DNA of 64,000 nt from contig CATNEN010000011.1 in assembly GCA_950097015.1 (NCBI GenBank), positions 2,790,001 through 2,854,000 on the forward strand, given 5' to 3'. Both the position numbers and the translations under genes were made by a program. This DNA is from Macrostomum hystrix (Eukaryota > Animalia > Platyhelminthes). Every line of letters begins with the position of its first letter. The stretch's first letter is position 1. Positions 1 through 40,443 of the stretch are shown here, piece by piece. The notes under the pieces are model-generated. The model was not told the origin of the DNA, made no database searches, and saw only the letters and a program-made list of their open reading frames with translations.

Positions 1-904
1 CATCCCAACACTTCCTGTTGCAGCAGAGTCATCCGTCTCCTGTGAAGGGTAACACCTTGCTGTGCTGCCGCGGCGCGGTCTCCCATCTGCTGCTGAATGT
101 CAGGCTGCGCGAGGTGCTGCTTCACTGCTGCTTTCAGACAACTGCCAGCGGCCTCAGCTGCATTCAGGAAAGGCGATTACGGTGGAAGATGTCGTACTTG
201 ATGGTCATCTCGCAATCCTGGGACATTCGCATGCGCTCGGGCATTATCGCAAAGGAGAACAAATGCGCTGTCCACCAGTTGGTCTATTTCCATCAGCATT
301 CCCTGAAACTGTGCATTTGTGAATCCACCTTCGGCAAGCTGGTAATGGACCAGCCCAAGGTCTGGCGAAATGGCGAGGCACAAGGTCAAATTCTGCCCCC
401 TCTGGCCAGCAACAATGTGCACGGCGGGCTCGCCCATCCTTGCCCAGCCTTGCGTTCTGGCGGTCCATACATTGAAGCCAAACTCATCCAGAAAGATGCA
501 GTGCTGTCCGTTGCCTTCGTTTAGCATCCAACTGGCATGCTGGAAGCGAGCTTCTTTGGTGATGTTCGAATTCCAATCGTCCGTGACAGTACGATGCTTT
601 TTTAACGTAATTAGCTGCTTGTCCAGTGCACGACTGATAAGTTCAGGCCAATGGTCTCCAATGCAAGCCACCGCACTGAAAGACCACCGCGCATAATTTG
701 CAGAGTGCAGGTGGGATTTTGTTCAACTATTGTTATCAGGTGCTCCGTCATTTCCTCATTCAGATGTTTCTTTCGATTGCCACCCTTGGCCAGACTATGA
801 TCTCTTCCGTCTCTTTCAAATACCTCAATGATGGACCTGGTGATTCTTGGTTTAATCTGCAATTGTCTCGCCAGGAGCCTCCAGTCTTCACCTCGGACAT
901 ACGA
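1..904 (-). pseudogene. Tc1/IS630-mariner-type DDE transposase pseudogene, main part (continues off the left edge of the window)
   Basis: Minus strand reads YVRGEDWRLLARQLQIK...KGGNRKK...NPTCTLQ (HTH region), then after a frameshift ISRALDKQLITLKK...IFLDEFGF...LCDNARAH...LPP*SPFLNAAE. The DDE triad is recognisable; the Tyr of LPPYSPxLNPIE is mutated to TAA at 177-179. Confidence 0.9.
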
Positions 905-1932
905 TGAAGAGTTTTGCGTGTTGATCAGACACACGAAACTCCCACTTCTAGACAATGGGGAACAATTGCCTAGGAATTTATAACAGTCACGTGACACTTA
1001 CTGCAATTGCTTCTTCTTCCTTAAGTAGTTCGTAGTCTTCTGGGTCCTTGAAATCCGGTAGTTCTTCTTCTTCTGGTCGACCGTGAGGTTTCGAGTCTGT
1101 GTTTCTTGAGTCTTGGTAGTCTTGTCTTCTTTTGTCTTCCTGGCAGCTGCTTGAGTTTGTCTGTTGGCCAATAAATGACGAGAGCGAATCAGATTACTTT
1201 TCGGTTTCCTCGAGCTCGGAATTCACAATAGAAACGTGCGCCCTAGTGAACAATTGAAATCTTTCTTGTATATCTCTAGTAGGTCCTCCTGAAGGGCGTC
1301 TTCTTCGTTACCTCCGAAAGATAACGGATAACTCAAATCAAATCAATCAATAATCCTCTAGGAATGTATCCTAGGAAACAAGGAGGCCTTTCTCAAATGT
1401 ATCGACGATATGTGGCTCTCGTAAACTTAGTTCAATTCAACAACTATTGCTAGCAATAAATTACTCTGTCTAGTAAAGCGCTTACCACTTGTCTTTCCCT
1501 CAGAGATGAGTCCTCTTCTTCGTAAGGTGTTTTGAAGTCCGGTGGACCGCTCCGAGTCTGAATTTTTAGCTCGGATTTTCGCTTGTATTTATAGCAAAAC
1601 CTTGGGGAAAAACCGGTTCTACTACCGGGTGTTTACTTAGGTCACACATATTTGTTTAGTGAGTCATGATTGTGAGTTTTTACCATATTTGGAATACAGT
1701 GCAAACACAGACGCAGAACCCGATGAGTCATAATTGTTTGCTTTACCATATTTGGAATTCAAGCAAACACAGCTGTCAAGAACCGGTTCTCCGGTTTCAT
1801 GTCACATGACTGTTTCTAAAAATAGCGTATGACTCATTCCTAAAAATAGATTAAATGTTGTAGCTAAGAGTTCCTTATGGCATTACTTTAAGTAGCGCGT
1901 TAAGCAAAAAGCACATTTTACAACTCTCTACA
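905..1932 (-). repeat. 3' LTR (1028 bp)
   Basis: On the element strand it starts TGTAGAGAG and ends CTCTTCA. No differences from 11995-13022 were seen on visual comparison. Confidence 0.96.
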
Positions 1933-1947
1933 ATATCTCCCTTTTTT
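1933..1947 (-). other. Polypurine tract (PPT)
   Basis: AAAAAAGGGAGATAT on the minus strand directly precedes the TG of the 3' LTR. Confidence 0.85.
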
Positions 1948-2354
1948 ACGAAAAATTCGTCCCGAATTTATTGTTGAGAGGAAAAGAAAATAGCATAACA
2001 ATAATAAGATAACATCACGTATTGACAGTATCAGGACTAGGTGAAATGGATTTAGGTGCGTATGGGTAGACATTAAAACACAAATGGATTATATCAGTGG
2101 TGTAAGTAGTTGGTTAAATGTTCGTGAAAAGAAATTGACAATTTGAGAAGCGATGTGTAACCATTTTGGCATTGAAAATCCGTCACCATTGTATAACAAA
2201 GAGTATCTTGACATTTAGCGTATAGTGGGTTGTCAATAACATAAAATTTTGGATTGTATTGGTTAACATGAGGGAGTGATAAACATGGGAAGGTATATGC
2301 AATAATCAATGGTCTGTTTGTTTTACTAGTTGATGCAATCAAAAATTTTTTTAC

Positions 2355-2978
2355 TTATTCAAGGCTGAATTGATGCCGGATATATTCATGTATTTGTGCT
2401 TGAGTTTTGACCGTTAGTATGGCTATTGGCCAAAATAGTTTATATAGTTGCAGGTAGGCCGGATCTTCCGTATGCTCGAGGATATAGAGGTAGGCCTCTG
2501 TATCCGTGACAATTTCGGCTCGGCGTGTCAGATGCTCGCCTAGTTGAAGTAAATATTGCCGATGTTGTTGGCATCGTAGTGGTGTCGGCCACGTCTTTAT
2601 TGTCTCTCGTAATTCCTGAGGCTCCATGTCATGCACATTCATGAGCAGTAGGTCCACTGCTACCGGTGTTAATTGTACCGTAGCTAAGGGTTCCGCTCGC
2701 ATCCGTAGGAAACAATCGGGGCATTTGTCGATATTTCGACTGCCGAGTGCCTCTAGGCAGGTAAAGCAGCTCCAGTGACGGTTGTCACAAATTTGTATTT
2801 GCGGTTGATTACCGCAAATGAGACAGTGGACCCTGTCTCGACAGCAGATTGGGCAGGTGCGTATTGGGTTGCCAGTTTGCTTTGCGGCTGTCTCGCATTG
2901 TTGGCATGTCCCATGTCCGACTTCGCATATGGGCATTAGAGTGGTCTGCTCGTCTAAGCAAATAGGGCAGTCTGGCAT
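2355..2978 (-). CDS. Retroelement accessory protein 2: two tandem RING-HC (C3HC4, C-x3-H type) fingers + helical C-terminus, 207 aa
   Basis: CPIC-x10-CEVGH-GT-CQQC-x13-CPIC followed by CLIC-x8-CDNRH-WS-CFTC-x11-CPDC. ATG start; lies inside the element between pol and the PPT. Confidence 0.85.
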   Translation of the reverse strand: MPDCPICLDEQTTLMPICEVGHGTCQQCETAAKQTGNPIRTCPICCRDRVHCLICGNQPQIQICDNRHWSCFTCLEALGSRNIDKCPDCFLRMRAEPLATVQLTPVAVDLLLMNVHDMEPQELRETIKTWPTPLRCQQHRQYLLQLGEHLTRRAEIVTDTEAYLYILEHTEDPAYLQLYKLFWPIAILTVKTQAQIHEYIRHQFSLE

Positions 2979-2999
2979 TGTTGTCTGTGGGTGGTTTGT

Positions 3000-3650
3000 T
3001 TAATGGACTTCTTGATCGGAGTTGACATATTCATATGATTCGTGTGGTGGCAGTAGATACGATAAGTCTTCATTTCTTAAAATTAGTGTGGGTAAAATTG
3101 TACAGAAAATGGGACAGGGATGAAGATTCATGTCATCGACAAGATTAAACAGTTTTTGTGCAATATCATGTATGGACAATTGTCGAAGCTCAGGGCCGTA
3201 TTGCAATGAGTATCGTACAATGTTTTTACGTGTTTTGTGAGCAATTCGTGGTATAGGCCATGCTTTTAGAAGTTGAATTATCTTATTAGAGGAAAAAAGA
3301 GTATAGGTTAATGGATGAAGTTGGCAACCATAATTTGGTTTAATACGCGCAAATTTGTTATAGATTACTAATAGTGGGGTATTATTGCAAACAGGACATT
3401 GGAAAATGGCTCGATAGGCAAACTTCTTTATACATTGCGGACACATAAAATGTTGGTTTTGACAGTATTGTACAGTTCGCCATGAGTTACATATCATACA
3501 TTGGCGGAGATTTCCACGGCACAAGGGACAGTTTTTTAATGGTTTTTTGTAGTGTGCGAGGCTTAAGCAAGAACCGCAAACATGGTGTTTATTGACACAT
3601 ATACATGGTAGTTTACATGAGAATTCTTCAAGACAGACAGGACAGTCCAT
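3000..3650 (-). CDS. Retroelement accessory protein 1: two tandem RING-HC fingers + C-terminal domain, 216 aa from ATG at 3650
   Basis: CPVC...CVNKH-HV-CGSC...CPLC and CMIC-x8-CQNQH-FM-CPQC-x11-CPVC. The ATG is in a strong Kozak context (ACCATGG); the ORF-track start at 3755 is a GTG. Confidence 0.85.
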   Translation of the reverse strand: MDCPVCLEEFSCKLPCICVNKHHVCGSCLSLAHYKKPLKNCPLCRGNLRQCMICNSWRTVQYCQNQHFMCPQCIKKFAYRAIFQCPVCNNTPLLVIYNKFARIKPNYGCQLHPLTYTLFSSNKIIQLLKAWPIPRIAHKTRKNIVRYSLQYGPELRQLSIHDIAQKLFNLVDDMNLHPCPIFCTILPTLILRNEDLSYLLPPHESYEYVNSDQEVH

Positions 3651-3781
3651 GGTAGTGTTCGCGAAAATTGTGTGGGCGTTTGCAGAGAACAGAGGTTTTA
3701 GTCGCCTTTTACGACAAGCTTGAGAAGCTGTAGTGCTATTCTTAATCCCGGTCACTACACGGGTAACAATAAACGAGTAAT

Positions 3782-6700
3782 TTAACGCGGGCGTAAGTTA
3801 TACGTATGAGTATTTGGTGGTGTGTTTGTGGTTTGTGTCTCGGCATGTGCTGTTGCAATGTGCTTGTTTGTTGTTTTTGTGTGGTCTGGATTCTGTAACG
3901 TTGGAAGGAATGTAGTGTCGTTAGTGATGCGTTTTAAACGTTGAATGTGAACGTAGAACTGAGGTTGATGTGGATCCTGGATATTTGCAAGGCGTGCTGT
4001 TGTCGCGGATATCAGTCCTGTTACACGGAAAGGTCCTTTGTATTTGAAAGCATGCTTGTGCGTATGCTGTGCCGGGTAGTGTAGGTAGACGATATCTCCT
4101 ACTTGTAAGGTAGAAGCATGATTACTTGTTGTAGGTACGGTAGATTGGTTGTCGAGATTATGTTTTGCAATTTGCCATGCTAGGTGTAATTGAGAAGTGA
4201 ACTTTTGTAGCGTCGTCGGCGTGTCAACATATTGAGATGGCAGTAATTTCTGAACTAATAGATTCGGTGGTTGAAAGTCTCGAGAGAACATCAGAAAGAA
4301 TGGTGTGTTCTCTGTTGAGCGATGAACTGCGCTATTGTAGGCCATTGTCACGGATTGTATGTAAATAATCCAATCTTCAGGTTGTTTGTAAACAAAGTGT
4401 GTCAGCATTTCATGTAGATTTCTGTGAAATCTTTCGACGAGGTTTGCTTTTGGATTATATGTCGAAGTGAATATTTGTTGAATATTCAGTAGTTTGGCGG
4501 CCTGTTGAAATAATTGCGATGTGAACTGTGTACCATTGTCAGATGTTAGCGTCTTAGGAGTTCCGAATTTGCAGATAATTTCATTATAGAAGGCCATTGC
4601 AACTGTTGTCGCTGTGATGTCAGGTATCGGAATGGCAACGGCGAATTTCGAAAAAACATCCAAGGCTGTAAGAATGTAGTTGTAGTCGATAGAGTGTTGT
4701 CGAGCCGGTGGTAGTGGTCCGGTAATGTCAATTGACACTGTGTCCCATGTAGTTGTCTTCGGCACTGATTGGAATTCAGGTTTTTGTCGTCTTCCGATTT
4801 TTGTTGAAGCACATGAGTGACATTGTGTGCAGTACTTGCGAATGTCTAAATTTATTGTTGGCCAAAAATAGAACTGGGCGACTCTCTGGATTGTTTTCTT
4901 GGCGGATAAGTGTCCTGCTAATGGACTATCATGGAGTTCGTGTAGGATCGCTGAACGGAATGTGTATGGTAGGTACAGTCGCGGAATATTGTTGTACACC
5001 CAGTAGAGTGCGAGTTCTCTGAAAACTAGACTATTTTTGTGTTTTCGTAAGAATTGTTTTTCGATTTTTGTAAGTTCATTTTCCGTTTCTTCTGTATCTT
5101 CTTGTATGGCTTTGTAAAAGGAATCGTCTTGTTGTGCTTTCAACAAGTCTTTTATGGTTGGAATTGGATGAACTGCATTGATCTCGTATGTTCTGGACAG
5201 TGCATCAGCGGCTTTATTCATTGGCCCTGGTTTGTAAACCAGGTGAAAGTTGTAGTCCTGTATTTTGAGGACCATTCGGATGAGTCTATTGTTCGTCTGT
5301 CCTTTTGTTTTAACAACGTGAGTCAGCGGTGCATGATCTGTGCGAATGATAGTTGGCAGTGGTGATCCATAGATGTAGTAATGGAATTGTCGAAGAGCAA
5401 ACAGAACAGCTAGTAGTTCTCGTTCAGTGGCTGACCATTTTGTTTCGTTTGGTCTTAGCGCTCTGCTGATGTAAGCAATCGGTTTTTCTTTCTTTGGTTC
5501 CATTTCCTGAAGTAGTACGGCTCCTAATCCGCTTCCTGATGCGTCTGTTTCTATGATAAAAGGTTTGTGGAAGTTCGGGTGTTTGAGAAGAGCATCACTA
5601 GTTAGTTGTTGTTTGATTCTATCGAAACTTTCCTGTTGTTCCGCTTTCCAGTTGTCTTCTTTCCACTTTGGAATTTTTAGTAGTTCGTACAATGGTTTAG
5701 CCGTTTGTGCAAAGTTAGGTAGGAATTTTCGGAAATATTGTGCTAGTCCAAGGAATGACTGCAGTTTGGTAATTGACGTAGGTTTCGGGAACTTCTTGAC
5801 CTTGTCGACGTTATTTGGGTCAGGTGATATGCCTCGTGACGAGACGTGATGTCCAAGATATCGGACCGAATCTCTGCAGAATTTACATTTTGTTGGTTGC
5901 AGTTTTAGACCTTGTTGTCGGAGTAAGAAGAGAGCTTGTTCCATGACTTTTACTAGTTGTTCAAAGTTATTTCCAAAGGCAAGAATATCATCAACATAGT
6001 GAAGCAGATTTGTACATCCGGCTAGCATATAGGCTGTAAGACGGCTCATTGTTGCTGGTGAGTTGGAGATTCCCATTGGACTTCTTTGATACGCGAAAAC
6101 TTCTCCTTTGTAAGTTTTGAAGGCAGTGTATTGTTTTGATTCTTCTTCAAGTTCGATTTGCCAGAATCCATGTCGTAGGTCAAATACGGTGAAGAGTGTC
6201 GCCGTATTGAGTCGTGCTAGCAGTTCTGAGATTTTTGGTAGACTTTGTTGATCGGTGGGAATGTACTTATTTAGGACTCGGAAATCACAGACGAGTCGTC
6301 TTTCGTTTGTTTCTTTCTTTTCGACAAGAAGGCAAGGTGAAGAATAAGCTGAGACGGTACGTTTTATGATTCCTGCTTTAAGCATTTTTTCTATGATTTC
6401 ATCGAAGTGTTGCTGTAGGTGTTTAGCGACTGGATATGGTTTACATTGGATTGGTTCTTGATGAGGTAGCAGTTCAATTTTTTGCTTGATATCTCGAGCA
6501 CATCCGATGTCGTAATCGTGATGACAGAAGACGTCGTTATACTTCCACAATAGATCTTTAACTTGTGTTTTTTGTCCTTCAGTGATTGGACTTTGAGAAA
6601 GATCAATTTGTTGTAGGAATTTTTGTTTAGACATTTTTGTTGTTGTGTCTGGTTGGATGAGCATTACCGAAGCTTGTGTGTTGAGATGTCCCATGCATGT

Positions 6701-9700
6701 TCCTGCATAAATTTTTACTGGATGTTGATTTGGATTTATAATTTGTACTGGGATGTTTCTTTCCTTTGTGATAAGGACTAGAGCCGTTGGTATTAAAACT
6801 TCTTTTGTTGTGAGGATCTTCTTTCTTGGTTCAAATATCATAGCTTCTTCGACATCGTCATGATTGGCGAGATATGCTTTAACCCAACATGTACTTTCCG
6901 GCTGTATGAAGACATCTTGTTTAATATGTACTTTTGGTTGAAGGTGAACTTGGCTGACTAAAGGATGTTCCACATTGTCCAGTTTGAATGTTTGTTTGTT
7001 AAAATCAAATGTTAATGGTAGATTCATTTGCCGAAATGTGTCGATTCCAATAATAACATCTTGGCTTGGAAGATGGTCAATAACAAATGCTTGTACCAGA
7101 AGTTGCTTGTTTGCAAGTTTAAGTGATATATTCACTTGTCCTAGGATATTAAGTGCATGTCCTCCGGCTCCAGCGACAGCGATTGAAGAAGGTCGCATAT
7201 GAAGTTGCAATTTGTCGTAGAGTCTTTTTGTGATGACTGTGATTGAACTTCCTGAGTCGAGAAGTGCTTTACTGGGCATGTTGTTTATAAATACTTGAGC
7301 CATCGCTCTACCCATATTGGCTTGCAAGGTGCAAATGTAATTTGCTGGCCATTTTGGATCCGTTGGTAGAGGAGGAGATTTCGGCGGTGGTCTCGCTGTT
7401 CTGATTTCAATTTTTGGGTAAATATTTGATGCTTCTGGTTCTGGTGCTGTTGGCAATAATTGTTTTCTTTGATCTTGTAGTAGAGTTTCTTCAATTTTTT
7501 CGTTGAGTGTAGTAGTTTCTTGTTGTTTGTCAATTTGGAAAATCCGTTGTTTTGCTGGATAGGCTCGTGCTACACATCGTACTACTGTGATAAAGATCAT
7601 TAGTGCAAGGTGAATCCATACAATGCATGCACTGGAGAAGATGAATCCCTGATAGTAACTTCCTTTTCCTTGGAGTAAATCGAGAAAGCTATTCGACCAA
7701 AAGGATCCTATTGCGTTATGTATGATGAATCCTGTCGAAAAGGATTGTTCTTTGTCCTGTTGGTTGTGTTGGGTAAAGAGCTTTTTCATCATCTGTCGTT
7801 GGGCGATAAAAACTTGAAGAAAATCATTAATTGTCCATCCTGGTGTGATTTCGTCAAGTTTGATGTCACCAAATGGTTTATAGGTGGTCTTATTTATCTT
7901 GAGCTGTAGGTCCGATAGTTCGTATGTTTCGTCGATAATAGCTTGCATACCAGTGATGTTTGTAATGTGCCCAGTTGTTGAGACCTTGTGTAGTTTATTA
8001 TTAATGTTGAAATAGTTGACTGCGTCAGTGCAGGGTCTCGGGATTGCAGTTCCAACAATTATATTGTGCACAGTATCTAGAAATCCTTGAATTCGTTTCC
8101 CATTGTAGTAAGCTTCGATTCTGGGTTTATCGTAGCACGTAGTTGATGTGTTTGATGGCAAGATATTAAAATGATGCAGTGGCACACATTTGTAAATCAA
8201 CAGATGGCCAGAGATGGGGATAGCTAAAGCATCTTGAATCCCTGTGATTTTTCTGAATGTAGACGTTGGATTGACATAATAGTTTTGTCGTGCATAGTTA
8301 AGTGCAGTTTCGTGCATTCTACAAGTCAGTTGGATCAGTGATTTGTGCAAGTAGTTTAGTTCTTTATGTAGGTTATGTTCCATTGCTGCGAGTTTTGCCG
8401 CTAGTAGTCGTGCAGAAACCATTGATGGTCTTTGTAGTTCTCTCTTTTTCCGAGCTGTGTTGGTTCTTGTTGAATAAGTACCATTGACCAGTCTCATAAA
8501 GGTATCCTCATCCATATCACGTAATTCGAGCGGTATCTCTTGTTCAGACACTAGAAGTTTTTTAGAGTTCTCCTTGCAGTTAATTTGGAGATACTTGGCT
8601 TTTTTTGGAAAAGTTAGGGCAAAATCCGACGTACTCGCAAGGAAGGTATTTGACAGTAGACTTCCTTTTATTGTATGGTACTTCTGGAATTTACAATCAA
8701 TATTCGGTTCAACTTTCCATGCAACGAAGTACTGTCGTTGGTATTCTGTAATCTCATAGTATGGGCTGTGTCGATGTTCAATTTGCCATTTGTAATTTTG
8801 ATGATATGTTGGAGCCAGCGGTACTTGCCATACTGCTTCGTTCCAGAGTTTTGCTGTTTCGCAGAACCCTGTGTTGTACTTGCAATCTTCCATTGATAAT
8901 TGTAGAGATTCCATGTTTTCAAATGGATTGTGGTAAAACAAGACTTTCCGGATCAAGTAACTGTTTGTCGTGGTGTAACGTGGCCATATGTATTCGTTCC
9001 AATGGACATATCTACCGCTCGCACTGTTCTTGGTCCTGAAGAGTTGAGAGTTTCCAATTTTTTCATCGGCATGAAGTTCTCCATCTTTAGAAAATAATGT
9101 TTGGTTCCACTGGAGGCATTCTTCTTGTGTGACAGGCAGTGCTGTTTGCCAGAATCGGATGCGATTCCATTGGATGTACCAAACCTTTTCGAGTTCATGT
9201 TTATCTCGGAAACAGATAATACCATATTGTCTATGTTTCTTTGTGTTTGCTTTGTAGACATCGATCGTTAATGGAATAGGTTTTGTTTGATTAGTTTTAA
9301 AGTAACTGCACTTGATTTCCGTTGGTATTTTGTAGATGACTGGTTGGATGTTGGCATCAGTAGGACATATCATGGGCACTGAAGATGGTACAACTGTCGG
9401 GAGAAGTAACATCACGATGGCTGAAAACAACCATCTTATCAGTATGTGCCGTTTCTTTTTCTTCACTTTGGTTGGTGTTGTCGGTTTATTGGTGTTTATT
9501 GAGTATCGTTGGTCTTCTGTCTCTCCAATTGGTGGAGTAAGGCGCATAGAAAAGTGCCATGGGTTGTTGCATCCTGATGGTCTGGTTTGTTGGTTATACC
9601 AGGTTGGTTGTTTCATATTGAATGTTAATGGTGTATTGAGAGTTTGCAGTACGGTACTTGTAGTATCCGTTCTCATGTCGATCCACGTTGTTGGTTCATC

Positions 9701-11461
9701 ATAGATATGATCATCATCATTTTCCATCGACGTATTGTAGTCACTTTTAGTCTGAGAAGATCTATCGTGCTTCGAGTAGTATGATTCGGTATTCACTGCT
9801 TTATCGTGTCCATTCTGTCCTTCAGATGAATTGACATGGGTTATGTTTTCGTATTCGGGATCAGGTTTGTACTTGGGTGTCGAAGGCGGTGTCTCTGTCA
9901 AGTCGATGTCATCGACTAAAATTTGTAACATGCTGATGTTTTCTTCAGACGTGTTGTGTGAATTTTTCGCACTGTGTTCCTCATTATTCCTTTCTGTGGA
10001 TGTGGACAATTCATCTATGCCTTCTTTGTTTTGCAGAATTTTTGAAAGATCACTCATCGTTGGAATTTTGAATAATCCTTTAATTTGTTGTTGTAATTGT
10101 TTTCGTTCAATGTGTTGACAGGTGTTGAAGGCAACACTTTCTCTTGGCGAGGGAGTCGATAATTCTTCAAACAATGAACCCATTATGCAGCTACTGTCGT
10201 TGCTTATGTTGTCGTTCTGTATTTTCTGTGTTGACTCATTGTTGTAGTAAAAATTGTTTTCTTCTGTATCCTCAGTTTCCTTTTGTGGCATGGGCGGCTC
10301 TTTCGAATGGTCGCTTTCGATTATAGTAATATAGGCTGCACCATCGTTGTCCAGATGAAGGTCATTGATTTCTTGCTCCTTCTTTTGTTTCTCAAGTTCA
10401 TCAAGAACATTGACGGAAAAGTCTGGCATAAGATCTTCAATCTTGAACTTTGGTTCAATAGTTTGAGTGTATTCAGGCTCAATAGCTTGAGTGTATTGTC
10501 GACGGACTTGCGTTGGTTGTCTTGGAGGTGGAGGATTTCTTTGTTGACGATAAGGTACGATGGCATTAGATGGTCTACTATCTTGTTGTCGACTATTTGT
10601 CCAATTACGGTTTGAAAGCTGTCTTGGAGGACGAGTCCAATTGGTCTGTCTATTGTCATTGTATGAACGTGGGTTGCCACGTGATCTGCAGTCTCTAGCA
10701 TAATGACCGATCCTTCCACAGGTGTAACAAGTTGATGTGTGCAAGTATCTCTGTTGTGGTTGTGGATAGGAATATCTCTGCTGTTGTGGTACAATAGCAG
10801 AAGTTTGGTGTTGCTGCATGAGTTTGCTTAATTGTTCTGCTAGTTGTGTCGTGTCACTATTATGAGTAGTCATAAGAGGTGCGCTAGCTTCCCATTGCAT
10901 TCCACAACGGAGCAATTGTTCCTCTGTGTTAATAGTTTCTCTCAGCAGTCTATCTCGCAAAGTAGGCTGTGCGTTGTTAATCACATGAAGTATTAAACTT
11001 TGTTCCCGGTCTTCAAGACGTTGTCTTTCTCGTGCAGCTGATTCGGCAGGTCCTATAGGTTGAGCTCCTTGATCCAATGGTGGAGGCTGATGTAATGCTT
11101 TGATGATCTTACGGATGTCATCAACAAAGGTGAGAAAACTCTCAGTGGGACTCATTTTTCGATTATGAAGTTTATGAAGGAGTACCGATCTGTTTGTTCC
11201 ACACCGTGCGAATTGTGCTCTCAGTTGGGTAACTAGAGCTTGATAATCTTGTTGTACTGCAGCTGTCAATTTTCCATAGATTTCTCGAGCTGTTCCTTGT
11301 AACAGTGGAGGTAGGAGGAGTGCTTTCTCTGCATTCTGTAATCCATATTCGCGTGAGACCAAATCAAAGTGATCAATGAATGTGTTGAAATCTTTATCCA
11401 TTGTATACATTCCGACCGTTTCCTTAATGTCACGATGGACCTGATAGTTTCTTCGTGCCAT
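3782..11461 (-). CDS. Single Gag-Env-Pol polyprotein (~2559 aa from ATG 11461)
   Basis: Gag CCHC knuckle CYTCGRIGHYARDC (~10688-10729). Hydrophobic signal-like stretch (~9385-9450), RKKR (8441-8452), TM (~7585-7650). PR LLDSGS (~7250), RT YVDD (~5987-5998), RNase H TDAS (~5540). IN with HHCC (~4830-4940), D..D..E core and GPF motif (~4030). No stop or frameshift in between. Confidence 0.95.
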   Translation of the reverse strand: MARRNYQVHRDIKETVGMYTMDKDFNTFIDHFDLVSREYGLQNAEKALLLPPLLQGTAREIYGKLTAAVQQDYQALVTQLRAQFARCGTNRSVLLHKLHNRKMSPTESFLTFVDDIRKIIKALHQPPPLDQGAQPIGPAESAARERQRLEDREQSLILHVINNAQPTLRDRLLRETINTEEQLLRCGMQWEASAPLMTTHNSDTTQLAEQLSKLMQQHQTSAIVPQQQRYSYPQPQQRYLHTSTCYTCGRIGHYARDCRSRGNPRSYNDNRQTNWTRPPRQLSNRNWTNSRQQDSRPSNAIVPYRQQRNPPPPRQPTQVRRQYTQAIEPEYTQTIEPKFKIEDLMPDFSVNVLDELEKQKKEQEINDLHLDNDGAAYITIIESDHSKEPPMPQKETEDTEENNFYYNNESTQKIQNDNISNDSSCIMGSLFEELSTPSPRESVAFNTCQHIERKQLQQQIKGLFKIPTMSDLSKILQNKEGIDELSTSTERNNEEHSAKNSHNTSEENISMLQILVDDIDLTETPPSTPKYKPDPEYENITHVNSSEGQNGHDKAVNTESYYSKHDRSSQTKSDYNTSMENDDDHIYDEPTTWIDMRTDTTSTVLQTLNTPLTFNMKQPTWYNQQTRPSGCNNPWHFSMRLTPPIGETEDQRYSINTNKPTTPTKVKKKKRHILIRWLFSAIVMLLLPTVVPSSVPMICPTDANIQPVIYKIPTEIKCSYFKTNQTKPIPLTIDVYKANTKKHRQYGIICFRDKHELEKVWYIQWNRIRFWQTALPVTQEECLQWNQTLFSKDGELHADEKIGNSQLFRTKNSASGRYVHWNEYIWPRYTTTNSYLIRKVLFYHNPFENMESLQLSMEDCKYNTGFCETAKLWNEAVWQVPLAPTYHQNYKWQIEHRHSPYYEITEYQRQYFVAWKVEPNIDCKFQKYHTIKGSLLSNTFLASTSDFALTFPKKAKYLQINCKENSKKLLVSEQEIPLELRDMDEDTFMRLVNGTYSTRTNTARKKRELQRPSMVSARLLAAKLAAMEHNLHKELNYLHKSLIQLTCRMHETALNYARQNYYVNPTSTFRKITGIQDALAIPISGHLLIYKCVPLHHFNILPSNTSTTCYDKPRIEAYYNGKRIQGFLDTVHNIIVGTAIPRPCTDAVNYFNINNKLHKVSTTGHITNITGMQAIIDETYELSDLQLKINKTTYKPFGDIKLDEITPGWTINDFLQVFIAQRQMMKKLFTQHNQQDKEQSFSTGFIIHNAIGSFWSNSFLDLLQGKGSYYQGFIFSSACIVWIHLALMIFITVVRCVARAYPAKQRIFQIDKQQETTTLNEKIEETLLQDQRKQLLPTAPEPEASNIYPKIEIRTARPPPKSPPLPTDPKWPANYICTLQANMGRAMAQVFINNMPSKALLDSGSSITVITKRLYDKLQLHMRPSSIAVAGAGGHALNILGQVNISLKLANKQLLVQAFVIDHLPSQDVIIGIDTFRQMNLPLTFDFNKQTFKLDNVEHPLVSQVHLQPKVHIKQDVFIQPESTCWVKAYLANHDDVEEAMIFEPRKKILTTKEVLIPTALVLITKERNIPVQIINPNQHPVKIYAGTCMGHLNTQASVMLIQPDTTTKMSKQKFLQQIDLSQSPITEGQKTQVKDLLWKYNDVFCHHDYDIGCARDIKQKIELLPHQEPIQCKPYPVAKHLQQHFDEIIEKMLKAGIIKRTVSAYSSPCLLVEKKETNERRLVCDFRVLNKYIPTDQQSLPKISELLARLNTATLFTVFDLRHGFWQIELEEESKQYTAFKTYKGEVFAYQRSPMGISNSPATMSRLTAYMLAGCTNLLHYVDDILAFGNNFEQLVKVMEQALFLLRQQGLKLQPTKCKFCRDSVRYLGHHVSSRGISPDPNNVDKVKKFPKPTSITKLQSFLGLAQYFRKFLPNFAQTAKPLYELLKIPKWKEDNWKAEQQESFDRIKQQLTSDALLKHPNFHKPFIIETDASGSGLGAVLLQEMEPKKEKPIAYISRALRPNETKWSATERELLAVLFALRQFHYYIYGSPLPTIIRTDHAPLTHVVKTKGQTNNRLIRMVLKIQDYNFHLVYKPGPMNKAADALSRTYEINAVHPIPTIKDLLKAQQDDSFYKAIQEDTEETENELTKIEKQFLRKHKNSLVFRELALYWVYNNIPRLYLPYTFRSAILHELHDSPLAGHLSAKKTIQRVAQFYFWPTINLDIRKYCTQCHSCASTKIGRRQKPEFQSVPKTTTWDTVSIDITGPLPPARQHSIDYNYILTALDVFSKFAVAIPIPDITATTVAMAFYNEIICKFGTPKTLTSDNGTQFTSQLFQQAAKLLNIQQIFTSTYNPKANLVERFHRNLHEMLTHFVYKQPEDWIIYIQSVTMAYNSAVHRSTENTPFFLMFSRDFQPPNLLVQKLLPSQYVDTPTTLQKFTSQLHLAWQIAKHNLDNQSTVPTTSNHASTLQVGDIVYLHYPAQHTHKHAFKYKGPFRVTGLISATTARLANIQDPHQPQFYVHIQRLKRITNDTTFLPTLQNPDHTKTTNKHIATAHAETQTTNTPPNTHTYNLRPR
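7560..9465 (-). other. Envelope glycoprotein domain (class III fusion protein, herpesvirus gB/chuvirus G-like) embedded in the polyprotein
   Basis: Signal peptide, 12 ectodomain Cys, six N-X-S/T sequons, furin-type RKKR and a C-terminal TM. NPTSTFRKITGIQDALAIPISGHLLIYKC resembles the gB motif NPTxxxxxxxGxxxxAxxxGDxxxxxxC. Confidence 0.8.
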
Positions 11462-11975
11462 ATTCGCAACTGGGAACGGAAATAATTCAAGTTCTGGATC
11501 GATGTTCAAGGGTTCGTCCAGATTGACTTCTCTGACAAGATTTAGTGTGAATAAAAAGTGTGTGTGTGTGCGTGTGCGTGTGTATCAGCAAATTGAAAAT
11601 GGTTTACACAGAGGAATTATTTACTCAGGACAAGGGAGAAAAATTTATACAAAGCAGGGAACGTATGCCGCTTTTAACGCTGAAAAGGGGTTATTGAAAT
11701 GTGAGCCGGTGAGTTCAGTCGCGCGATTCCCAGGTGTGCAAACAATAGAGCGAAGTGACGCGTGTGGCTTATGTGCAAACAATATCCGGTAGGGACAGCA
11801 AAATTTTTCAGAGGGATGACGCAACAAAATTTTTATGAAACGGTGGATTATTTTAAATCAAAAGCAAAATTAATAAGTTGCAAAAATTTTTTTTCCTTTT
11901 TTTTTTATGTTAAAACAATTCGAAAGGGGTACCGCAAAAAATGTTTTGTATCTCGGCCTGGGCTTGATTGCAGGG

Positions 11976-11992
11976 CCTGGGCGAGATCACCA
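11976..11992 (-). other. Primer-binding site, probably tRNA-Val
   Basis: TGGTGATCTCGCCCAGG begins 2 nt after the 5' LTR. It is complementary to ...CCUGGGCGAGAUCACCA, which matches the tRNA-Val 3' end as I recall it from yeast (CCUGGGCGAAAUCACCA) with one mismatch. Confidence 0.75.
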
Positions 11993-11994
11993 GT

Positions 11995-13022
11995 TGAAGA
12001 GTTTTGCGTGTTGATCAGACACACGAAACTCCCACTTCTAGACAATGGGGAACAATTGCCTAGGAATTTATAACAGTCACGTGACACTTACTGCAATTGC
12101 TTCTTCTTCCTTAAGTAGTTCGTAGTCTTCTGGGTCCTTGAAATCCGGTAGTTCTTCTTCTTCTGGTCGACCGTGAGGTTTCGAGTCTGTGTTTCTTGAG
12201 TCTTGGTAGTCTTGTCTTCTTTTGTCTTCCTGGCAGCTGCTTGAGTTTGTCTGTTGGCCAATAAATGACGAGAGCGAATCAGATTACTTTTCGGTTTCCT
12301 CGAGCTCGGAATTCACAATAGAAACGTGCGCCCTAGTGAACAATTGAAATCTTTCTTGTATATCTCTAGTAGGTCCTCCTGAAGGGCGTCTTCTTCGTTA
12401 CCTCCGAAAGATAACGGATAACTCAAATCAAATCAATCAATAATCCTCTAGGAATGTATCCTAGGAAACAAGGAGGCCTTTCTCAAATGTATCGACGATA
12501 TGTGGCTCTCGTAAACTTAGTTCAATTCAACAACTATTGCTAGCAATAAATTACTCTGTCTAGTAAAGCGCTTACCACTTGTCTTTCCCTCAGAGATGAG
12601 TCCTCTTCTTCGTAAGGTGTTTTGAAGTCCGGTGGACCGCTCCGAGTCTGAATTTTTAGCTCGGATTTTCGCTTGTATTTATAGCAAAACCTTGGGGAAA
12701 AACCGGTTCTACTACCGGGTGTTTACTTAGGTCACACATATTTGTTTAGTGAGTCATGATTGTGAGTTTTTACCATATTTGGAATACAGTGCAAACACAG
12801 ACGCAGAACCCGATGAGTCATAATTGTTTGCTTTACCATATTTGGAATTCAAGCAAACACAGCTGTCAAGAACCGGTTCTCCGGTTTCATGTCACATGAC
12901 TGTTTCTAAAAATAGCGTATGACTCATTCCTAAAAATAGATTAAATGTTGTAGCTAAGAGTTCCTTATGGCATTACTTTAAGTAGCGCGTTAAGCAAAAA
13001 GCACATTTTACAACTCTCTACA
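11995..13022 (-). repeat. 5' LTR (1028 bp)
   Basis: Direct repeat of 905-1932, followed by the PBS on the element strand. Confidence 0.96.
12645..12940 (-). promoter_or_regulatory. LTR U3 promoter/enhancer: TATA box and clustered MEF2, CArG and AP-1 motifs
   Basis: TATAAATA (minus, 12676-12683) with TCAG about 30 nt downstream. CTAAAAATAG x2 (12906, 12930), CCATATTTGG x2 (12773, 12836), TGA(G/C)TCA x3 (12750, 12814, 12920). Confidence 0.55.
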
Positions 13023-13370
13023 ACGATTGCAGATACGATTCTCTGTCGGTCCTTCTCCGATACTGTAGTGTAGTGCCAGCGCAGCATAGTGGTTGATGAC
13101 CTCTGTTCTCTTGTACATGCCAGATTTGCGCTGTAGGCAAAGGCTAACTATGAATCCTCGATTTCGACCACAGACAACAGAATGAAACAACTCCAATCGA
13201 TTTCCCCGGAGAGTATGCTTAAAACACATTGAATTGAGGGAAATCAATTGGACTTAAGGGAATTCATTTGGACTTATCTATGTTCGAGAAGGCTGGTTGG
13301 GCCCTCGCTTTCGACTTCAGCTAATGGGGAAATCAATTGGCTTTTTTGCGAAATCAATTGACAAAAGGTA
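13023..13370 (-). mobile_element. 5' end of the Tc1-like element interrupted by the LTR element (N-terminal codons + terminal region)
   Basis: ATG at 13087 gives MLRWHYTTVSEKDRQRIVSA, which joins YVRGEDW at 904. Three GAAATCAATTG direct repeats (~13240, 13330, 13350) and a TA at ~13370 suggest an IR/DR terminus. Confidence 0.7.
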
Positions 13371-34400: not shown

Positions 34401-37400
34401 GTAAGTACTATAATTAAGATAAGAGAAGCGAAAAATCAGTCAATTTTGAATTAACCGAAGAAATTGAAAACAGAAACTTAGTTAAAACGAATTGCAACTA
34501 ACTTTCACCACTTTTTAGCCAAAGATTCAAATTCATTCTTCTTATCTCTAAATATGAAAGTCTTCTGCTAAAAAACTGTTATAAGTTACATTTTTTCAAA
34601 ATTTATTTTCATGCACAAATATTTTCGGGCTAGTGACTATTGACCATTTACCACAAATTGACCAAGTTGTGGCTGTTTGATAGGCCTAGTAACAAAAAAA
34701 TGTCAACTTTACAAACTATCTGACCCTAAATGACCCCAGATAAAAACAAGTATATATTTTTATTAACTATCGCCCAGCTGCTCATTTCTCACAAAAGCTT
34801 GAACAACAGGCAAGCGACATGGCATAGCAGACATGAACTATTAGGTCAATATTTTAGTTCATGACCTTAATAATTGTTCTACGAGTGCATCAGTGTTCCC
34901 ACTCCAATCTACCCATTTTTCCTCCGCAGCCTAAAGAAAATTCCGCAGATAGCTTAACCTATTAAATATGATAAGATTTTCAACAAAACTATGGAAAAAA
35001 ACTTTTGAACAAGCATTTTTTTAAACTCAAAATAAGTAAGCAAGTCTAAGTCAATGTATTCTAGACTTCCAGTTTACAATCAAGTTGTCAACCCATCACA
35101 TTGGCTGTGGATGGCAAAAAGTTCTTTTTATTCTACTTTAACGAAAAAACAATGGCTGGCTCAATGTTTGCACTTTACGGAAAAGATTTGACGTGTCACG
35201 TGACACACAGGCACAACTGCTATTTAGTTACAACTACAAGCATTAAACATTCTTTAGGTTCTATTCAACTGTTAATAAAAGTAAAACTAATTAAGTAAAG
35301 TTAACTACTAGAGATACAATACTTTGCTTATTAATTAGACTGCTGCCAAGACTAGAGATTGGACAGGATGAAGATTTTTGGGATTGGGATTCCTAATTTC
35401 GGGAATCGGGATTGCAATTCATGATTGAATTTCAGGTTTCAGCATTTAAAGATATGAATATATAAGATGGTTGGATGGGATCTCAAAATAATTTCAGAAT
35501 CATGATCATGAGTTTGGCCAGGATCCCAGGCTTTTGTGATCGGGATCCAATCCTACCTCTAGTCAAGACGCGTGACATTGTCTTATTAGTTACTAGTACG
35601 CCCCATTGTTCTGTTTTCTAGTGATTTGCATATCATCTTGGCGGCCTTTTTCAGTGCTTCTGCAGCCAGCTCGTCTTGAGTCTTCAACTTTCGCTTCAGC
35701 AGCTTGGCGTCATCATGTAGAGCTTTGGCCTCTCGCTCTTCTAAAGTCCTCATTTTTTTCTGATACTCGAGCAGCATAGCCGAAGCAGCTCGCTTCTCAG
35801 CTTCAATTATTTCACGCTCTGCAGCCAACTTTTTTTCAGCCGCCTCCAATTCCATCTTCTTCTTGTTTACTTCAATCTCAGCAGCAAGCTGCTCTTCCAA
35901 CTGTTTAGCGGCAATCCGTGCATCTTTCTTGGCCTTATCAGCATCTCTTTGCTGTTGAAGGAATTCCATGTACACTGAACGAGCCTTCCCAGCAGACTGA
36001 ACGTAGACGTCTGTCAATGGAAAGTTTTCGCAGGTTGTAGGCTCCTCACCAACTAGCCCAGATTGGCGGATGTAGTGTCGAACAAAAAGGCAGGCATCAA
36101 TAGACAATTCACCAAGCTTGTTGCGTTTTTTCGTTAACAAGTCCGATAACTCGCTAAAGACTCGCTCTACTGCAGCGTTGCCTGGCTGAATGGTCAGAGC
36201 ACCCAAAGCTAGTCGGGTTAGTGTGCCGTACTTTTTTTGACCACCAAGCTCTAGGGCTGACACGCGAAGCCAAAATGTAACCACATCATTGTCCTTAGCC
36301 AAAGCCACTACCTGTTGGTCAACGAGGAAGCATCGCCATTCGGAATCAATTTTTGATACGGAATCAGGTGTATATTCCATTTGTTTGGCTAGGTTACATG
36401 CAGCAAGCGATGTAGTAGCTGCTGCGAGACCGACTTTCATAGGATATTGCGGATCCAGAAATTGTAGCGAGCGTAAGACAGGATTCGACAGAGGCAAATG
36501 TTCTTGCAAGTACAATGCAAGTTCACGATAGAAGGTGCGAACACGTAGGAAAAAGAGCTTCTGTTGAGTGTCCGACAAGCCTTTTTTTAATGTCTCTTTA
36601 GCTGCTTCGCCGATAAAGATGGCTTCATTAGAGAGGAAGTATTTGCCTTCCAACGACAAATTTCTCAAATGTCGATTGTTCTCCTGAATGTGCGCTGGAT
36701 TTAAAAAGAATGACAAAGTCTGCCTAAACAAATTGCGGACTTCTCCATGCAAAAGATGGACACACGGCTCCTCTGTCTGAAATGCCTTCTCGAATTGGTC
36801 TAGATGCGGCAAGACAGCAGCCAGAAATTGCAGATTAAGCAGTGTATGCGTCGACTTTAGGTGCTCAGCAATTTCTTTGGTCTTTTTGGTCTTTTGCTCA
36901 ATCAGAGATGGATTCTTCACAAAGAATTCTTCCAGAGAATCATATTGCTCAATAAGCCTATTAACAACAGGCAAAAGCTGCACCCATCTTGTTTCAACGC
37001 GCCGCAACATGCGATGCTGGGCCACTTGAAGCAGTGACTGAACTTTGTTATAACGCGTCCACCTTTTCGAGGTCTGAAAGTAGGAGAACACTTCATCAGC
37101 GAAGTCCTCTACATTTCCATCAAAGGCTTCACATGCACGTCGAACCGCATTGGAGACAATATGCAAACTGCATGGTCCAATGGAAACAAGATGAGATGCA
37201 AAGTCATGCATTATTTTTTGGAAGCCGTTAAACTTTCCAACCATAACTGCTGGTCCATCTGTTGATATGCTAACACAGTTCCTAATCGGAATGTTGAATT
37301 CATCGAGAATCTTCAAAACTTCCTCTTTCAGAGCAGCGGCTGAGCAGTCAGAAACTTCAACTGTTTTCAAGGCAGTTGTACACAGCCTTCCCTTCTTCGA

Positions 37401-40400: not shown

Positions 40401-40443
40401 GCACAGAGGAAGCCAGTGTCTCTGTAACAACACCCTCAGCCAT
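28484..40443 (-). CDS. PRKX: cAMP-dependent protein kinase catalytic subunit, PRKX type, 356 aa (exons 39822-40443, 31730-31911, 28484-28750)
   Basis: [54 protein letters not shown]. Splice phases 1 and 0 are consistent (622+182+267=1071 nt). Confidence 0.9.
28825..31585 (+). repeat. 23-bp minisatellite (tctcaatagatctcactctctaa)n filling PRKX intron 2
   Basis: Tandem units. Confidence 0.97.
31960..34195 (+). repeat. 23-bp minisatellite (cacattttcactctggtgtccat)n in PRKX intron 1
   Basis: Tandem units, diverging to an ...ctacttccat/ctccattccat variant after ~33500. Confidence 0.97.
35353..35561. mobile_element. ~209-bp hAT-type MITE nested in the 3' UTR of the hAT element
   Basis: Ends TAGAG...CTCTA; flanking gccaagac / gtcaagac (7/8) look like an 8-bp TSD; internal gggatc/gggatt repeats. 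Confidence 0.55.
35586..37997 (-). CDS. hAT transposase, 803 aa, intact
   Basis: N-terminal BED-like finger (CTVC...H...H), SIDES, STDG, CSLH, TRW and AVERVFS dimerisation motif; K/E/A-rich coiled-coil tail. Confidence 0.92.
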   Translation of the reverse strand: MSLSKPRATAFRHEWLQRSIDGRVLSEWLQPDRSDELLGFCTVCKKSFHLGTSGFGAVTAHAQGKKHKSRLPVMNETGIAHFFPTQGSKPSFTAMKKADAEVLMAELRLGIHFIEHNIAYNTADHSGVYPAMFHDSKIAQDMKCHRTKLCYLVNHALAPVMRDEMIQDLNSGCGLFSLSIDESSDGARKHMAVVISFVSSKKGRLCTTALKTVEVSDCSAAALKEEVLKILDEFNIPIRNCVSISTDGPAVMVGKFNGFQKIMHDFASHLVSIGPCSLHIVSNAVRRACEAFDGNVEDFADEVFSYFQTSKRWTRYNKVQSLLQVAQHRMLRRVETRWVQLLPVVNRLIEQYDSLEEFFVKNPSLIEQKTKKTKEIAEHLKSTHTLLNLQFLAAVLPHLDQFEKAFQTEEPCVHLLHGEVRNLFRQTLSFFLNPAHIQENNRHLRNLSLEGKYFLSNEAIFIGEAAKETLKKGLSDTQQKLFFLRVRTFYRELALYLQEHLPLSNPVLRSLQFLDPQYPMKVGLAAATTSLAACNLAKQMEYTPDSVSKIDSEWRCFLVDQQVVALAKDNDVVTFWLRVSALELGGQKKYGTLTRLALGALTIQPGNAAVERVFSELSDLLTKKRNKLGELSIDACLFVRHYIRQSGLVGEEPTTCENFPLTDVYVQSAGKARSVYMEFLQQQRDADKAKKDARIAAKQLEEQLAAEIEVNKKKMELEAAEKKLAAEREIIEAEKRAASAMLLEYQKKMRTLEEREAKALHDDAKLLKRKLKTQDELAAEALKKAAKMICKSLENRTMGRTSN
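38925..39420 (+). repeat. ~26-bp minisatellite (ggacattggttctctgctgctggggg)n
   Basis: Tandem units with variable G-run. Confidence 0.95.
39421..39800 (-). repeat. 75-bp tandem array of tRNA-like units (3 near-identical + ~2 diverged)
   Basis: Units start at 39421, 39496 and 39571. The minus strand has A-box-like TGGCTTAGTCAGCGG and B-box GGAGTTCGAATCTC. Confidence 0.75.

What the first reader, a model, noticed from the sequence alone, without database searches (positions are those of the whole stretch)
2355..3650. Two paralogous double-RING-finger accessory genes carried inside the LTR element
Seen: two intact ATG-initiated ORFs, 21 nt apart, between pol and the PPT. Each has two tandem C3HC4 fingers with C-x3-H spacing and a shared downstream motif (LLKAWPIP / TIKTWPTP), pointing to an internal duplication. 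Known: RING proteins are E3 ubiquitin ligases used by large DNA viruses to disable host defences (HSV ICP0, baculovirus IE2/PE38, poxvirus p28); accessory E3s are atypical for Ty3/gypsy elements. Inference: an anti-silencing or anti-immunity module (e.g. degrading piRNA/RNAi or restriction factors), possibly captured from the same DNA-virus source as the gB-like env. This would make the element a complex invertebrate retrovirus-like entity with Vif/Vpx-like functions.
Basis: partly seen in the sequence, partly recalled or inferred. Interest (0 to 1): 0.88.

Follow-up and report, generated by a model that had tools for sequence, protein, structure and literature searches.

The report
Double-RING accessory genes in flatworm retroelement
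A young, intact retrovirus-like element of a flatworm-type genome carries two related small genes after its polymerase gene; each protein has two RING zinc fingers, the hallmark of ubiquitin-ligase enzymes, and I found no earlier report of such genes in this kind of element.

Summary
On the minus strand, between the pol stop (3782) and the polypurine tract (1936-1947), lie two intact ATG ORFs: ORF-A (3650-3000, 216 aa) and ORF-B (2978-2355, 207 aa), 21 nt apart. Each has two C3HC4 fingers and a C-terminal helical domain with a WP motif. They are paralogues (30% identity, E 1e-19).

They sit in a complete 12.1-kb Ty3/gypsy-type element (905-13022) with identical 1028-bp LTRs, a 4-bp target duplication, PBS, PPT and one unbroken 2575-codon gag/ENV-like/pol frame.

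An exhaustive profile search of 1.84 billion proteins found only about six true relatives. One is from the flatworm Macrostomum lignano. All are about 205-215 aa, and all 16 zinc ligands are invariant. ORF-A and ORF-B each have their own closer relative, so the duplication is old and both copies have been kept.

Family profiles and confident AlphaFold models match RING E3 domains only. The helical domain matches nothing, and no DNA-virus RING protein matches specifically.

Best reading: element-encoded RING E3-like accessory proteins of a new family. E3 activity and an anti-defence role are inferred, not shown. I left out fetching relatives' DNA context, so linkage to pol in other elements is unproven.

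The parts
901..904 (.). target-site duplication, copy next to the 3' LTR (4 bp)
   Evidence: The same 4 bases flank both LTR outer ends.
905..1932 (-). 3' LTR (1028 bp, TG...CA)
   Evidence: 100% identical to 11995-13022; blastn gave a 1029-nt block with 0 mismatches, whose first base is a chance match outside the LTR.
1936..1947 (-). polypurine tract (12 purines), 3 nt before the 3' LTR
   Evidence: Read directly from the sequence.
2355..2978 (-). ORF-B, double-RING accessory gene (207 aa + stop): finger 1 at 2844-2969, finger 2 at 2712-2825, helical C-terminal domain at 2361-2696
   Evidence: AlphaFold2 pLDDT 92.6, pTM 0.81. Foldseek matches RING domains only.
3000..3650 (-). ORF-A, double-RING accessory gene (216 aa + stop): finger 1 at 3519-3644, finger 2 at 3387-3500, helical C-terminal domain at 3024-3371
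   Evidence: AlphaFold2 pLDDT 83.8, pTM 0.73. Foldseek matches RING domains only.
3782..11461 (-). single unbroken gag / ENV-like / pol reading frame (first ATG at 11461; frame open from 11509; 0 stops, 0 frameshifts): gag zinc knuckle 10685-10732, ENV-like segment 7550-9448, protease 7013-7309, RT 5843-6322, RNase H 5252-5650, integrase 4451-4969
   Evidence: Pfam hits. Two strongly hydrophobic segments bracket about 570 aa. 67% identical over 1497 columns to an M. lignano 'Retrovirus-related polyprotein', up to the last codon.
11975..11992 (-). putative primer-binding site, starting TGG, 2 nt after the 5' LTR
   Evidence: Read directly from the sequence; the tRNA was not identified.
11995..13022 (-). 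5' LTR (1028 bp)
13023..13026 (.). target-site duplication, copy next to the 5' LTR

Best explanation
ORF-A and ORF-B are genuine accessory genes of a recently inserted, structurally complete Ty3/gypsy-type element with the GAG-ENV-POL layout, in a macrostomid-like flatworm genome. They belong to a small, previously undescribed family of about 210-aa proteins built as RING-RING-helical domain. The most likely mechanism is a self-contained RING-type E3 ubiquitin ligase. Finger 1 carries the residues that RING E3s use to hold and activate a host E2~ubiquitin: an aliphatic residue two positions after the first Cys, Pro after the seventh ligand, and Arg after the eighth. Finger 2 lacks that Arg and probably supports finger 1, as the silent partner does in RING dimers. 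The fast-diverging C-terminal helical domain with the WP motif would choose the substrate. The two old paralogues would then have different substrates, or act as a pair. Shown here: the genes, their paralogy, their place in the element, the RING assignment, the family and its conservation. Inferred: E2 recruitment, ligase activity, the division of labour between the fingers, and that the target is a host factor that limits the element.
For: - Element: identical LTRs, TSD, PBS, PPT and an unbroken polyprotein frame.
- Paralogy: E 1e-19.
- Rarity: the exhaustive profile search of 1.84e9 proteins gave 9 hits. Six are true relatives (P0001-P0005 and the single-finger P0007); P0010 came from a cluster look-up. 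P0001 is from Macrostomum lignano.
- Old duplication: ORF-A is 40% identical to P0002 (E 3e-50) and ORF-B 37% identical to P0001 (E 7e-46), both over the full length. That is closer than A is to B, so the duplication predates these lineages and both types persist.
- Ligand conservation: all 16 predicted ligands are invariant in 7 sequences. They make up 16 of the 18 invariant columns at 24-40% overall identity.
- Finger 1 has the Arg after the last ligand in every unit except ORF-B; finger 2 never has it.
- RING assignment: PDB profile hits to TRIM5/TRIM21 at 3e-5 for finger 1 and BRE1 at 1.5e-4 for finger 2. Five of 7 members hit Pfam Sina_RING at E<0.01. Foldseek superposes single fingers on Not4, TRIM21, RNF4 and BIRC7 RINGs at 2-3 A with probability up to 0.97.
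- Models: confident single-body predictions, pLDDT 92.6 / pTM 0.81 and 83.8 / 0.73.
- Where variation lies: mean pairwise identity is 0.41 and 0.39 in the two fingers and 0.17 in the C-terminal domain.
- Composition: third-position composition of both ORFs is element-like (A3 0.35, G3 0.08-0.19) and unlike the host exons (A3 0.14-0.19, G3 0.27).
Against: - No biochemical, transcript or peptide evidence.
- No single Pfam RING model reaches its curated cut-off for either window protein; ORF-A has no Pfam hit at all.
- ORF-B lacks the Arg after the last ligand of finger 1.
- The genomic context of the relatives is unknown, so co-occurrence with pol in other elements is not shown.
- With identical LTRs this copy is too young for its own intactness to prove selection.
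- dN/dS could not be computed: the paralogues are saturated at 30% identity, and no relative's DNA was read.
- The relative orientation of the two fingers does not match solved RING dimers or fusions (rmsd about 12 A).
Confidence: 0.55

Rival explanations
1. The proteins are RING-fold scaffolds or ligases that serve the element's own particle cycle rather than attacking host defence. For example, they could mark or organise Gag or ENV for membrane budding or trafficking, or regulate the polymerase, as the small RING matrix protein Z does in arenaviruses.
For: The element carries an ENV-like membrane protein segment, so it may need budding functions. The Lassa virus Z RING is among the structural matches of ORF-A (rmsd 2.0 A over 47 columns, probability 0.97). 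The proteins are small and compact.
Against: The Z match is no better than matches to many cellular RING E3s, and its E-value is 0.23. The proteins show no strongly hydrophobic segment (maximum hydropathy 1.16-1.38). No late-domain or myristoylation evidence was sought. Two diverged paralogues with a fast-changing C-terminal domain fit changing external targets better than a constant internal partner.
Confidence: 0.22
2. The ORFs are passenger sequence: a host gene pair or other foreign DNA picked up by this element lineage, carried without function for the element and drifting neutrally.
For: No functional data exist. This copy is too young to have decayed (identical LTRs). Relatives are extremely few, and their context is unknown.
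Against: No host-like homologue exists among 1.84e9 representatives apart from the small family itself. A-type and B-type each have a full-length relative in other data with all ligands kept. All complete members have the same length, start with Met 1-8 residues before the first Cys, and share the WP motif. Codon composition matches the element, not the host exons.
Confidence: 0.08
3. The double cross-brace zinc module binds nucleic acid or chromatin, not an E2. The proteins would act as transcription or RNA-export regulators of the element, a Tat/Rev/CERV-like role.
For: Retroelements with downstream genes often need regulators for subgenomic RNA. In the related nematode element Cer1, an extra protein is needed for export of the genomic RNA (paper PMC10309623, listed). 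Low-probability structural matches include GATA and ADD/PHD zinc modules.
Against: Those matches have probability 0.18-0.35 and rmsd above 11 A, against 0.9-0.97 and 2-3 A for RING E3 domains. The ligand order is C3HC4, not C4HC3. Finger 1 keeps the E2-contact residues.
Confidence: 0.1

Closest known systems
Cellular RING-HC (C3HC4) E3 ubiquitin ligase domains (TRIM5/TRIM21, BRE1, RING1B/RING2, RNF4, Not4)
   Same: Eight-ligand C3HC4 pattern. Profile similarity at E 3e-5 to 1e-3. Predicted cross-brace fold superposing at 2-3 A. Finger 1 keeps the aliphatic, Pro and Arg positions used for E2~ubiquitin binding (the role of these positions is from my own knowledge of RING E3s).
   Different: Two fingers sit 6 residues apart in one about 210-aa chain, followed by a helical domain with no detectable relative. 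No coiled coil, B-box or other known partner domain. Pfam cut-offs are not reached. The predicted finger-finger geometry differs from solved RING dimers and fusions (rmsd about 12 A).
RING proteins of large DNA viruses
   Same: A mobile or viral genome that carries its own RING protein; the generic RING fold.
   Different: No specific likeness. The best BFVD match has E 3.9e-3 and TM 0.21 over one finger; ICP0 ranks 40th at E 0.26; IE2, PE38 and p28 were not among the 50 matches shown. The carrier here is a retroelement. A common origin with the ENV-like gene is unsupported.
Extra ORFs of LTR retroelements (bdelloid rotifer ORF3 types GDSL esterase, DEDDy exonuclease, dUTPase, PMC5408684; plant aORFs, PMC7264820; orchid m6A demethylase domain, PMC9289625)
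   Same: Additional conserved coding capacity downstream of pol, kept within an element lineage.
   Different: None of those is a RING protein; the word RING does not occur in the rotifer paper. Here there are two tandem paralogues, and the ENV-like part sits elsewhere, between gag and protease.
GAG-ENV-POL Ty3/gypsy 'errantiviruses' of Platyhelminthes, Nematoda and Bryozoa (eLife 2026, PMC13524379)
   Same: Same order of parts: gag zinc knuckle, a membrane-protein-like segment, then PR-RT-RH-IN. Closest protein relatives are from the flatworm M. lignano.
   Different: That paper's text has no occurrence of RING, ubiquitin, zinc or accessory. The two post-pol genes are therefore an addition to the described architecture, or were not looked for.
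Lentiviral Vif/Vpx/Vpr/Vpu
   Same: Small post-pol accessory proteins that use the ubiquitin system against host restriction. This is a functional analogy only (my own knowledge and review PMC11360348, listed).
   Different: Those proteins are adaptors that borrow cellular ligases and have no RING of their own. There is no sequence or fold relation, and the analogy is untested here.

Membership tests
RING-HC zinc finger (C3HC4) | Eight metal ligands in the order C-C-C-H-C-C-C-C with RING spacing | tested here: met
   All four fingers of the window and all fingers of the relatives fit. The 16 ligand columns are invariant in 7 sequences.
RING-HC zinc finger (C3HC4) | Significant profile similarity to known RING domains | tested here: met
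   Family profile against PDB: TRIM5 2.6e-5, TRIM21 3.3e-5, BRE1 1.5e-4, RING2 7e-4.
RING-HC zinc finger (C3HC4) | Score above Pfam's curated gathering cut-off | tested here: not met
   ORF-A has no hit. ORF-B scores 18.6 bits on zf-C3HC4 (cut-off 21) and 20.5 bits on Sina_RING (cut-off 29.3). Five of 7 members hit Sina_RING at E<0.01; whether any relative reaches a cut-off was not reported by that call.
RING-HC zinc finger (C3HC4) | Cross-brace fold | tested here: met
   In prediction only: AlphaFold2 pLDDT 92.6 and 83.8; Foldseek to solved RINGs at rmsd 2-3 A, probability up to 0.97.
Active RING E3 ubiquitin ligase | E2-contact residues (aliphatic after the first Cys pair position, Pro after ligand 7) and the activating Arg/Lys after ligand 8 | tested here: inconclusive
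   Finger 1: aliphatic in ORF-A, ORF-B, P0002-P0005, P0007 and P0010 (Cys in both P0001 units); Pro in all; Arg in all but ORF-B. Finger 2: Pro in most; no Arg; Lys in one.
Active RING E3 ubiquitin ligase | Ubiquitin transfer with an E2 | not testable with these tools
   No biochemical data.
Ty3/gypsy (Metaviridae-type) LTR retroelement | LTR pair, TSD, PBS, PPT; gag zinc knuckle; domain order PR-RT-RNase H-IN | tested here: met
GAG-ENV-POL gB-type 'errantivirus' | Membrane glycoprotein segment between gag and protease | tested here: met
   Hydrophobic segments at aa 688-717 and 1287-1320 bracket about 570 aa with cysteines. The segment is 60-62% identical to the same segment in M. lignano relatives.
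GAG-ENV-POL gB-type 'errantivirus' | That segment has the herpesvirus gB (class III fusogen) fold | tested here: inconclusive
   No Pfam hit at E<1 and no PDB sequence hit.
RING E3s of large DNA viruses (ICP0, IE2/PE38, p28) | Specific sequence or fold similarity beyond a generic RING | tested here: not met
   BFVD best E 3.9e-3, TM at most 0.24; ICP0 E 0.26. No viral protein appears among the sequence hits.

The most novel reading that the evidence does not exclude
A retrovirus-like element of flatworms encodes its own pair of catalytic E3 ubiquitin ligases. These would destroy host factors that silence or restrict it (for example piRNA-pathway or other restriction proteins in stem cells or germline). 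That would be the first retroelement known to bring the ligase itself rather than an adaptor, with a rapidly evolving helical domain recording the arms race.
Probability: 0.25. Interest if true: 0.85.

Novelty: new variant of a known kind. Interest (0 to 1): 0.62.

Why it matters
Accessory genes that manipulate host ubiquitination are a hallmark of complex vertebrate retroviruses and large DNA viruses. LTR retroelements of invertebrates are generally seen as gag-pol(-env) machines. An element-borne, conserved, duplicated RING-RING family would show that invertebrate retrovirus-like elements can also be complex. It would add a new protein family, with a new helical domain, to the catalogue of mobile-element genes. 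In a regenerative flatworm model with good transcriptomic resources, it would also give a concrete handle on how such elements cope with host control. If it proves only a lineage-restricted passenger, it is still a clean case of gene gain by a retroelement.

Tried and rejected
- Word-indexed protein searches with ORF-A and ORF-B found nothing. Because that tool is blind to longer or shorter kin, I relied on the exhaustive, length-free profile search. It covers fusions and fragments, so I ran no separate per-domain search.
- Three of its nine hits (P0006, P0008, P0009) are repeat proteins matched over short stretches and were discarded. P0007 shares only finger 1.
- The Pfam hit TPR_Vps41 on the ORF-B C-terminal domain (19.1 bits, cut-off 27, one of 7 members) was rejected as noise.
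- Foldseek found no partner for the helical domain.
- Origin from a DNA virus was rejected.
- No second copy of the RING genes or of the element exists in the window, so copies could not be compared in-window.
- dN/dS between A and B was not attempted: at 30% identity the synonymous sites are saturated.
- A link between P0001 and an LTR was sought through its N-terminal read-through. It is 48% identical over 29 aa to the LTR-derived repeat of P0011, at E 0.15-0.26, which is not significant.
- P0011 shows pol followed directly by LTR-derived sequence. It is a defective, chimeric gene model with one large internal gap, so it says nothing about presence of the RING genes.
- The Rfam scan of the window found nothing.
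- The contig is not human.

Full report
**Observation.** The finding's interval holds two ORFs on the minus strand.
- ORF-A runs 3650..3000 (216 aa). Its ATG is the first in a stretch open from 3755.
- ORF-B runs 2978..2355 (207 aa).
- They are 21 nt apart and in the same reading frame: one stop and six sense codons lie between them.

Each protein starts with Met one to three residues before the first Cys and contains two eight-ligand C3HC4 fingers, six residues apart, each with C-x3-H. Finger 1 has loops of 10-11 and 12-13 residues; finger 2 has loops of 8 and 11. A helical C-terminal half follows, with a WP motif at aa 130-131. A general RING pattern matches only these two ORFs in the six-frame translation of the window and never in 30 shuffles. 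The proteins are homologous over both fingers and into the C-terminal half (30% identity, 164 columns, E 1e-19).

**Surroundings.**
- The ORFs lie inside a complete LTR retroelement on the minus strand, 905-13022.
- Its two LTRs (905-1932 and 11995-13022) are 1028 bp, TG...CA, and 100% identical.
- The same four bases flank both ends, at 901-904 and 13023-13026.
- A TGG-initiated primer-binding site follows the 5' LTR. A 12-purine tract lies 3 nt before the 3' LTR.
- One frame of 2575 codons (11509..3782, first ATG at 11461) is unbroken, with no stops or frameshifts.
- By Pfam it holds a gag zinc knuckle (aa 260-275), protease (1401-1499), RT (1730-1889), RNase H (1954-2086) and integrase (2181-2353).
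- The 1125 aa between knuckle and protease have no Pfam or PDB sequence match. They contain an acid-rich stretch and two strongly hydrophobic segments (aa 688-717 and 1287-1320) that bracket about 570 aa with cysteines. That is the look of a type I membrane protein.
- This layout is the GAG-ENV-POL order reported for gB-type env-carrying Ty3/gypsy elements of Platyhelminthes, Nematoda and Bryozoa (PMC13524379).
- The ENV-like segment is 60-62% identical to two database polyproteins. One is named 'Retrovirus-related polyprotein' of Macrostomum lignano. That protein aligns at 67% identity over 1497 columns, right up to the last codon of the window's frame. So pol ends at 3785, with its stop at 3782-3784, and the RING ORFs are separate downstream genes.
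- The rest of the window is animal DNA: a hAT transposase, a protein kinase exon, a PTB-PDZ-PDZ exon and many minisatellites. It is not human.

**The family.**
- Word-indexed searches found nothing.
- The exhaustive profile search of 1.84 billion representatives, which has no length limit, gave nine hits.
- P0001-P0005 are true relatives. P0010 is a cluster mate of P0005. P0007 shares one finger.
- P0001 is UniRef A0A1I8G201, 'RING-type domain-containing protein' of M. lignano. The others come from single short Logan contigs of unknown organisms.
- All complete members are 206-214 aa with the same RING-RING-helical plan and the WP motif.
- ORF-A is closest to P0002 (40% over 200 columns, E 3e-50). 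ORF-B is closest to P0001 (37% over 200 columns, E 7e-46). Every other pairing, including A with B, is about 26-34% over its full-length alignments. The A/B duplication is therefore older than the split between these lineages, and both types have been kept.
- P0001 itself carries two B-type units, about 51% identical, fused in one frame, plus a partial third. Tandem duplication recurs in this family.
- All 16 predicted ligands are invariant in seven sequences and account for 16 of the 18 invariant columns.
- Mean pairwise identity is 0.41 and 0.39 in the fingers (0.26 and 0.23 without the ligand columns) and 0.17 in the C-terminal domain.
- This pattern cannot arise under neutral drift.
- Third-position composition of both ORFs is A-rich and G-poor like gag-pol, and unlike the host exons. 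That argues against a recent host transduction.

**What the proteins are.**
- Single-sequence Pfam scores are below the cut-offs: none for ORF-A, and 18.6-20.5 bits for ORF-B. Five of seven members hit Sina_RING at E<0.01.
- A six-sequence profile hits solved RING domains significantly. Finger 1 matches TRIM5 and TRIM21 (about 3e-5), RING2 and RNF4. Finger 2 matches BRE1 (1.5e-4), Mdm2 and MAT1.
- AlphaFold2 models are confident despite shallow alignments: ORF-B pLDDT 92.6 / pTM 0.81, ORF-A 83.8 / 0.73. This indicates one compact body.
- Foldseek against the PDB returns only RING domains. Single fingers superpose at 2-3 A with probability up to 0.97. Engineered two-RING chains (RING1B-BMI1 fusion, RNF4 fused dimer) are the top whole-chain matches, but at about 12 A rmsd.
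- The helical domain matches nothing.
- Against predicted viral structures the best match is a generic RING (E 3.9e-3, TM 0.21), and ICP0 ranks 40th. No specific tie to any DNA-virus RING protein exists.

**Mechanism.**
- Finger 1 keeps an aliphatic residue two positions after the first Cys in all members except the two P0001 units, which have Cys there. It keeps Pro after the seventh ligand in all, and Arg after the eighth in all but ORF-B.
- Finger 2 never has that Arg.
- From established knowledge of RING E3s, these positions hold the E2 and lock the E2~ubiquitin conjugate. In RING dimers one RING is often the active one and the other supports it.
- I therefore propose a single-chain ligase: finger 1 as the E2-binding finger, finger 2 as its support, and the variable helical domain as the substrate-binding part.
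- How the genes are expressed is also unknown. A spliced subgenomic RNA, spliced-leader trans-splicing, reinitiation or stop read-through are all possible.

**Comparison and novelty.**
- Extra ORFs in LTR retroelements are known (PMC5408684, PMC7264820, PMC9289625), and so are RING E3s in large DNA viruses.
- I found no report of RING genes in a retroelement. The paper on env-carrying Ty3/gypsy elements and the paper on M. lignano LTR elements have no occurrence of RING or ubiquitin. Targeted literature searches gave nothing relevant.
- The family itself has no Pfam model and only a handful of members.
- I rate it a new variant of a known kind.

As a result, linkage of the RING genes to pol in other elements, copy-to-copy intactness and dN/dS remain open. 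Database proteins P0001 and P0011 were compared only as separate pieces, as they stand. I noticed no slip.

Noticed in passing
window 2979-2999 and P0001: ORF-A and ORF-B share one reading frame, separated by a single stop and six sense codons. In the M. lignano protein P0001, two B-type units (about 51% identical) are fused in one frame. A read-through or fusion product is conceivable.
   Followed up: partly
window 7550-9448 (-): ENV-like segment inside the gag-pol frame: two hydrophobic segments bracket about 570 aa. It is 60-62% identical to M. lignano relatives, has no Pfam or PDB sequence match, and its gB fold was not tested.
   Followed up: partly
window 9700-10300 (-), roughly aa 400-600 of the polyprotein: Acid-rich stretch (17-21 Asp+Glu per 100 aa) between gag and the ENV-like segment; the M. 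lignano relative P0011 has a similar Glu-rich stretch.
   Followed up: no
window 1918-2073 (-): A 51-aa ATG ORF with a hydrophobic stretch runs across the polypurine tract into the 3' LTR. The 420 nt between ORF-B and the PPT are otherwise non-coding.
   Followed up: no
window 15.1-24.0 kb, 27.0-34.2 kb, 38.9-39.7 kb, 46.6-47.4 kb, 52.0-56.5 kb: At least a dozen minisatellite arrays (periods 16-60 nt, up to 160 copies). They explain the extreme GC/AT skews and the overlapping long ORFs at 31.9-34.1 kb.
   Followed up: partly
window 35586-37997 (-): Intact 803-aa ORF with a hAT dimerisation domain and DUF4371: a hAT-type DNA transposase.
   Followed up: no
window 39802-40443 (-) and 57077-57889 (+): Host-like exons: a protein kinase domain, and a PTB plus two PDZ domains (X11/Mint-like architecture).
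   Followed up: no
P0011 (database protein): Chimeric 3074-aa gene model: an unrelated N-terminal half, then gag-ENV-protease, with one large internal gap in RT-integrase. A 51-aa segment is repeated (90% identical) before gag and after pol, i.e. translated LTR-derived sequence.
   Followed up: partly
ORF-B finger 1, window 2844-2969 (-): ORF-B alone in the family has Cys instead of Arg after the last ligand of finger 1, so it may be the less active or regulatory partner of the pair.
   Followed up: no
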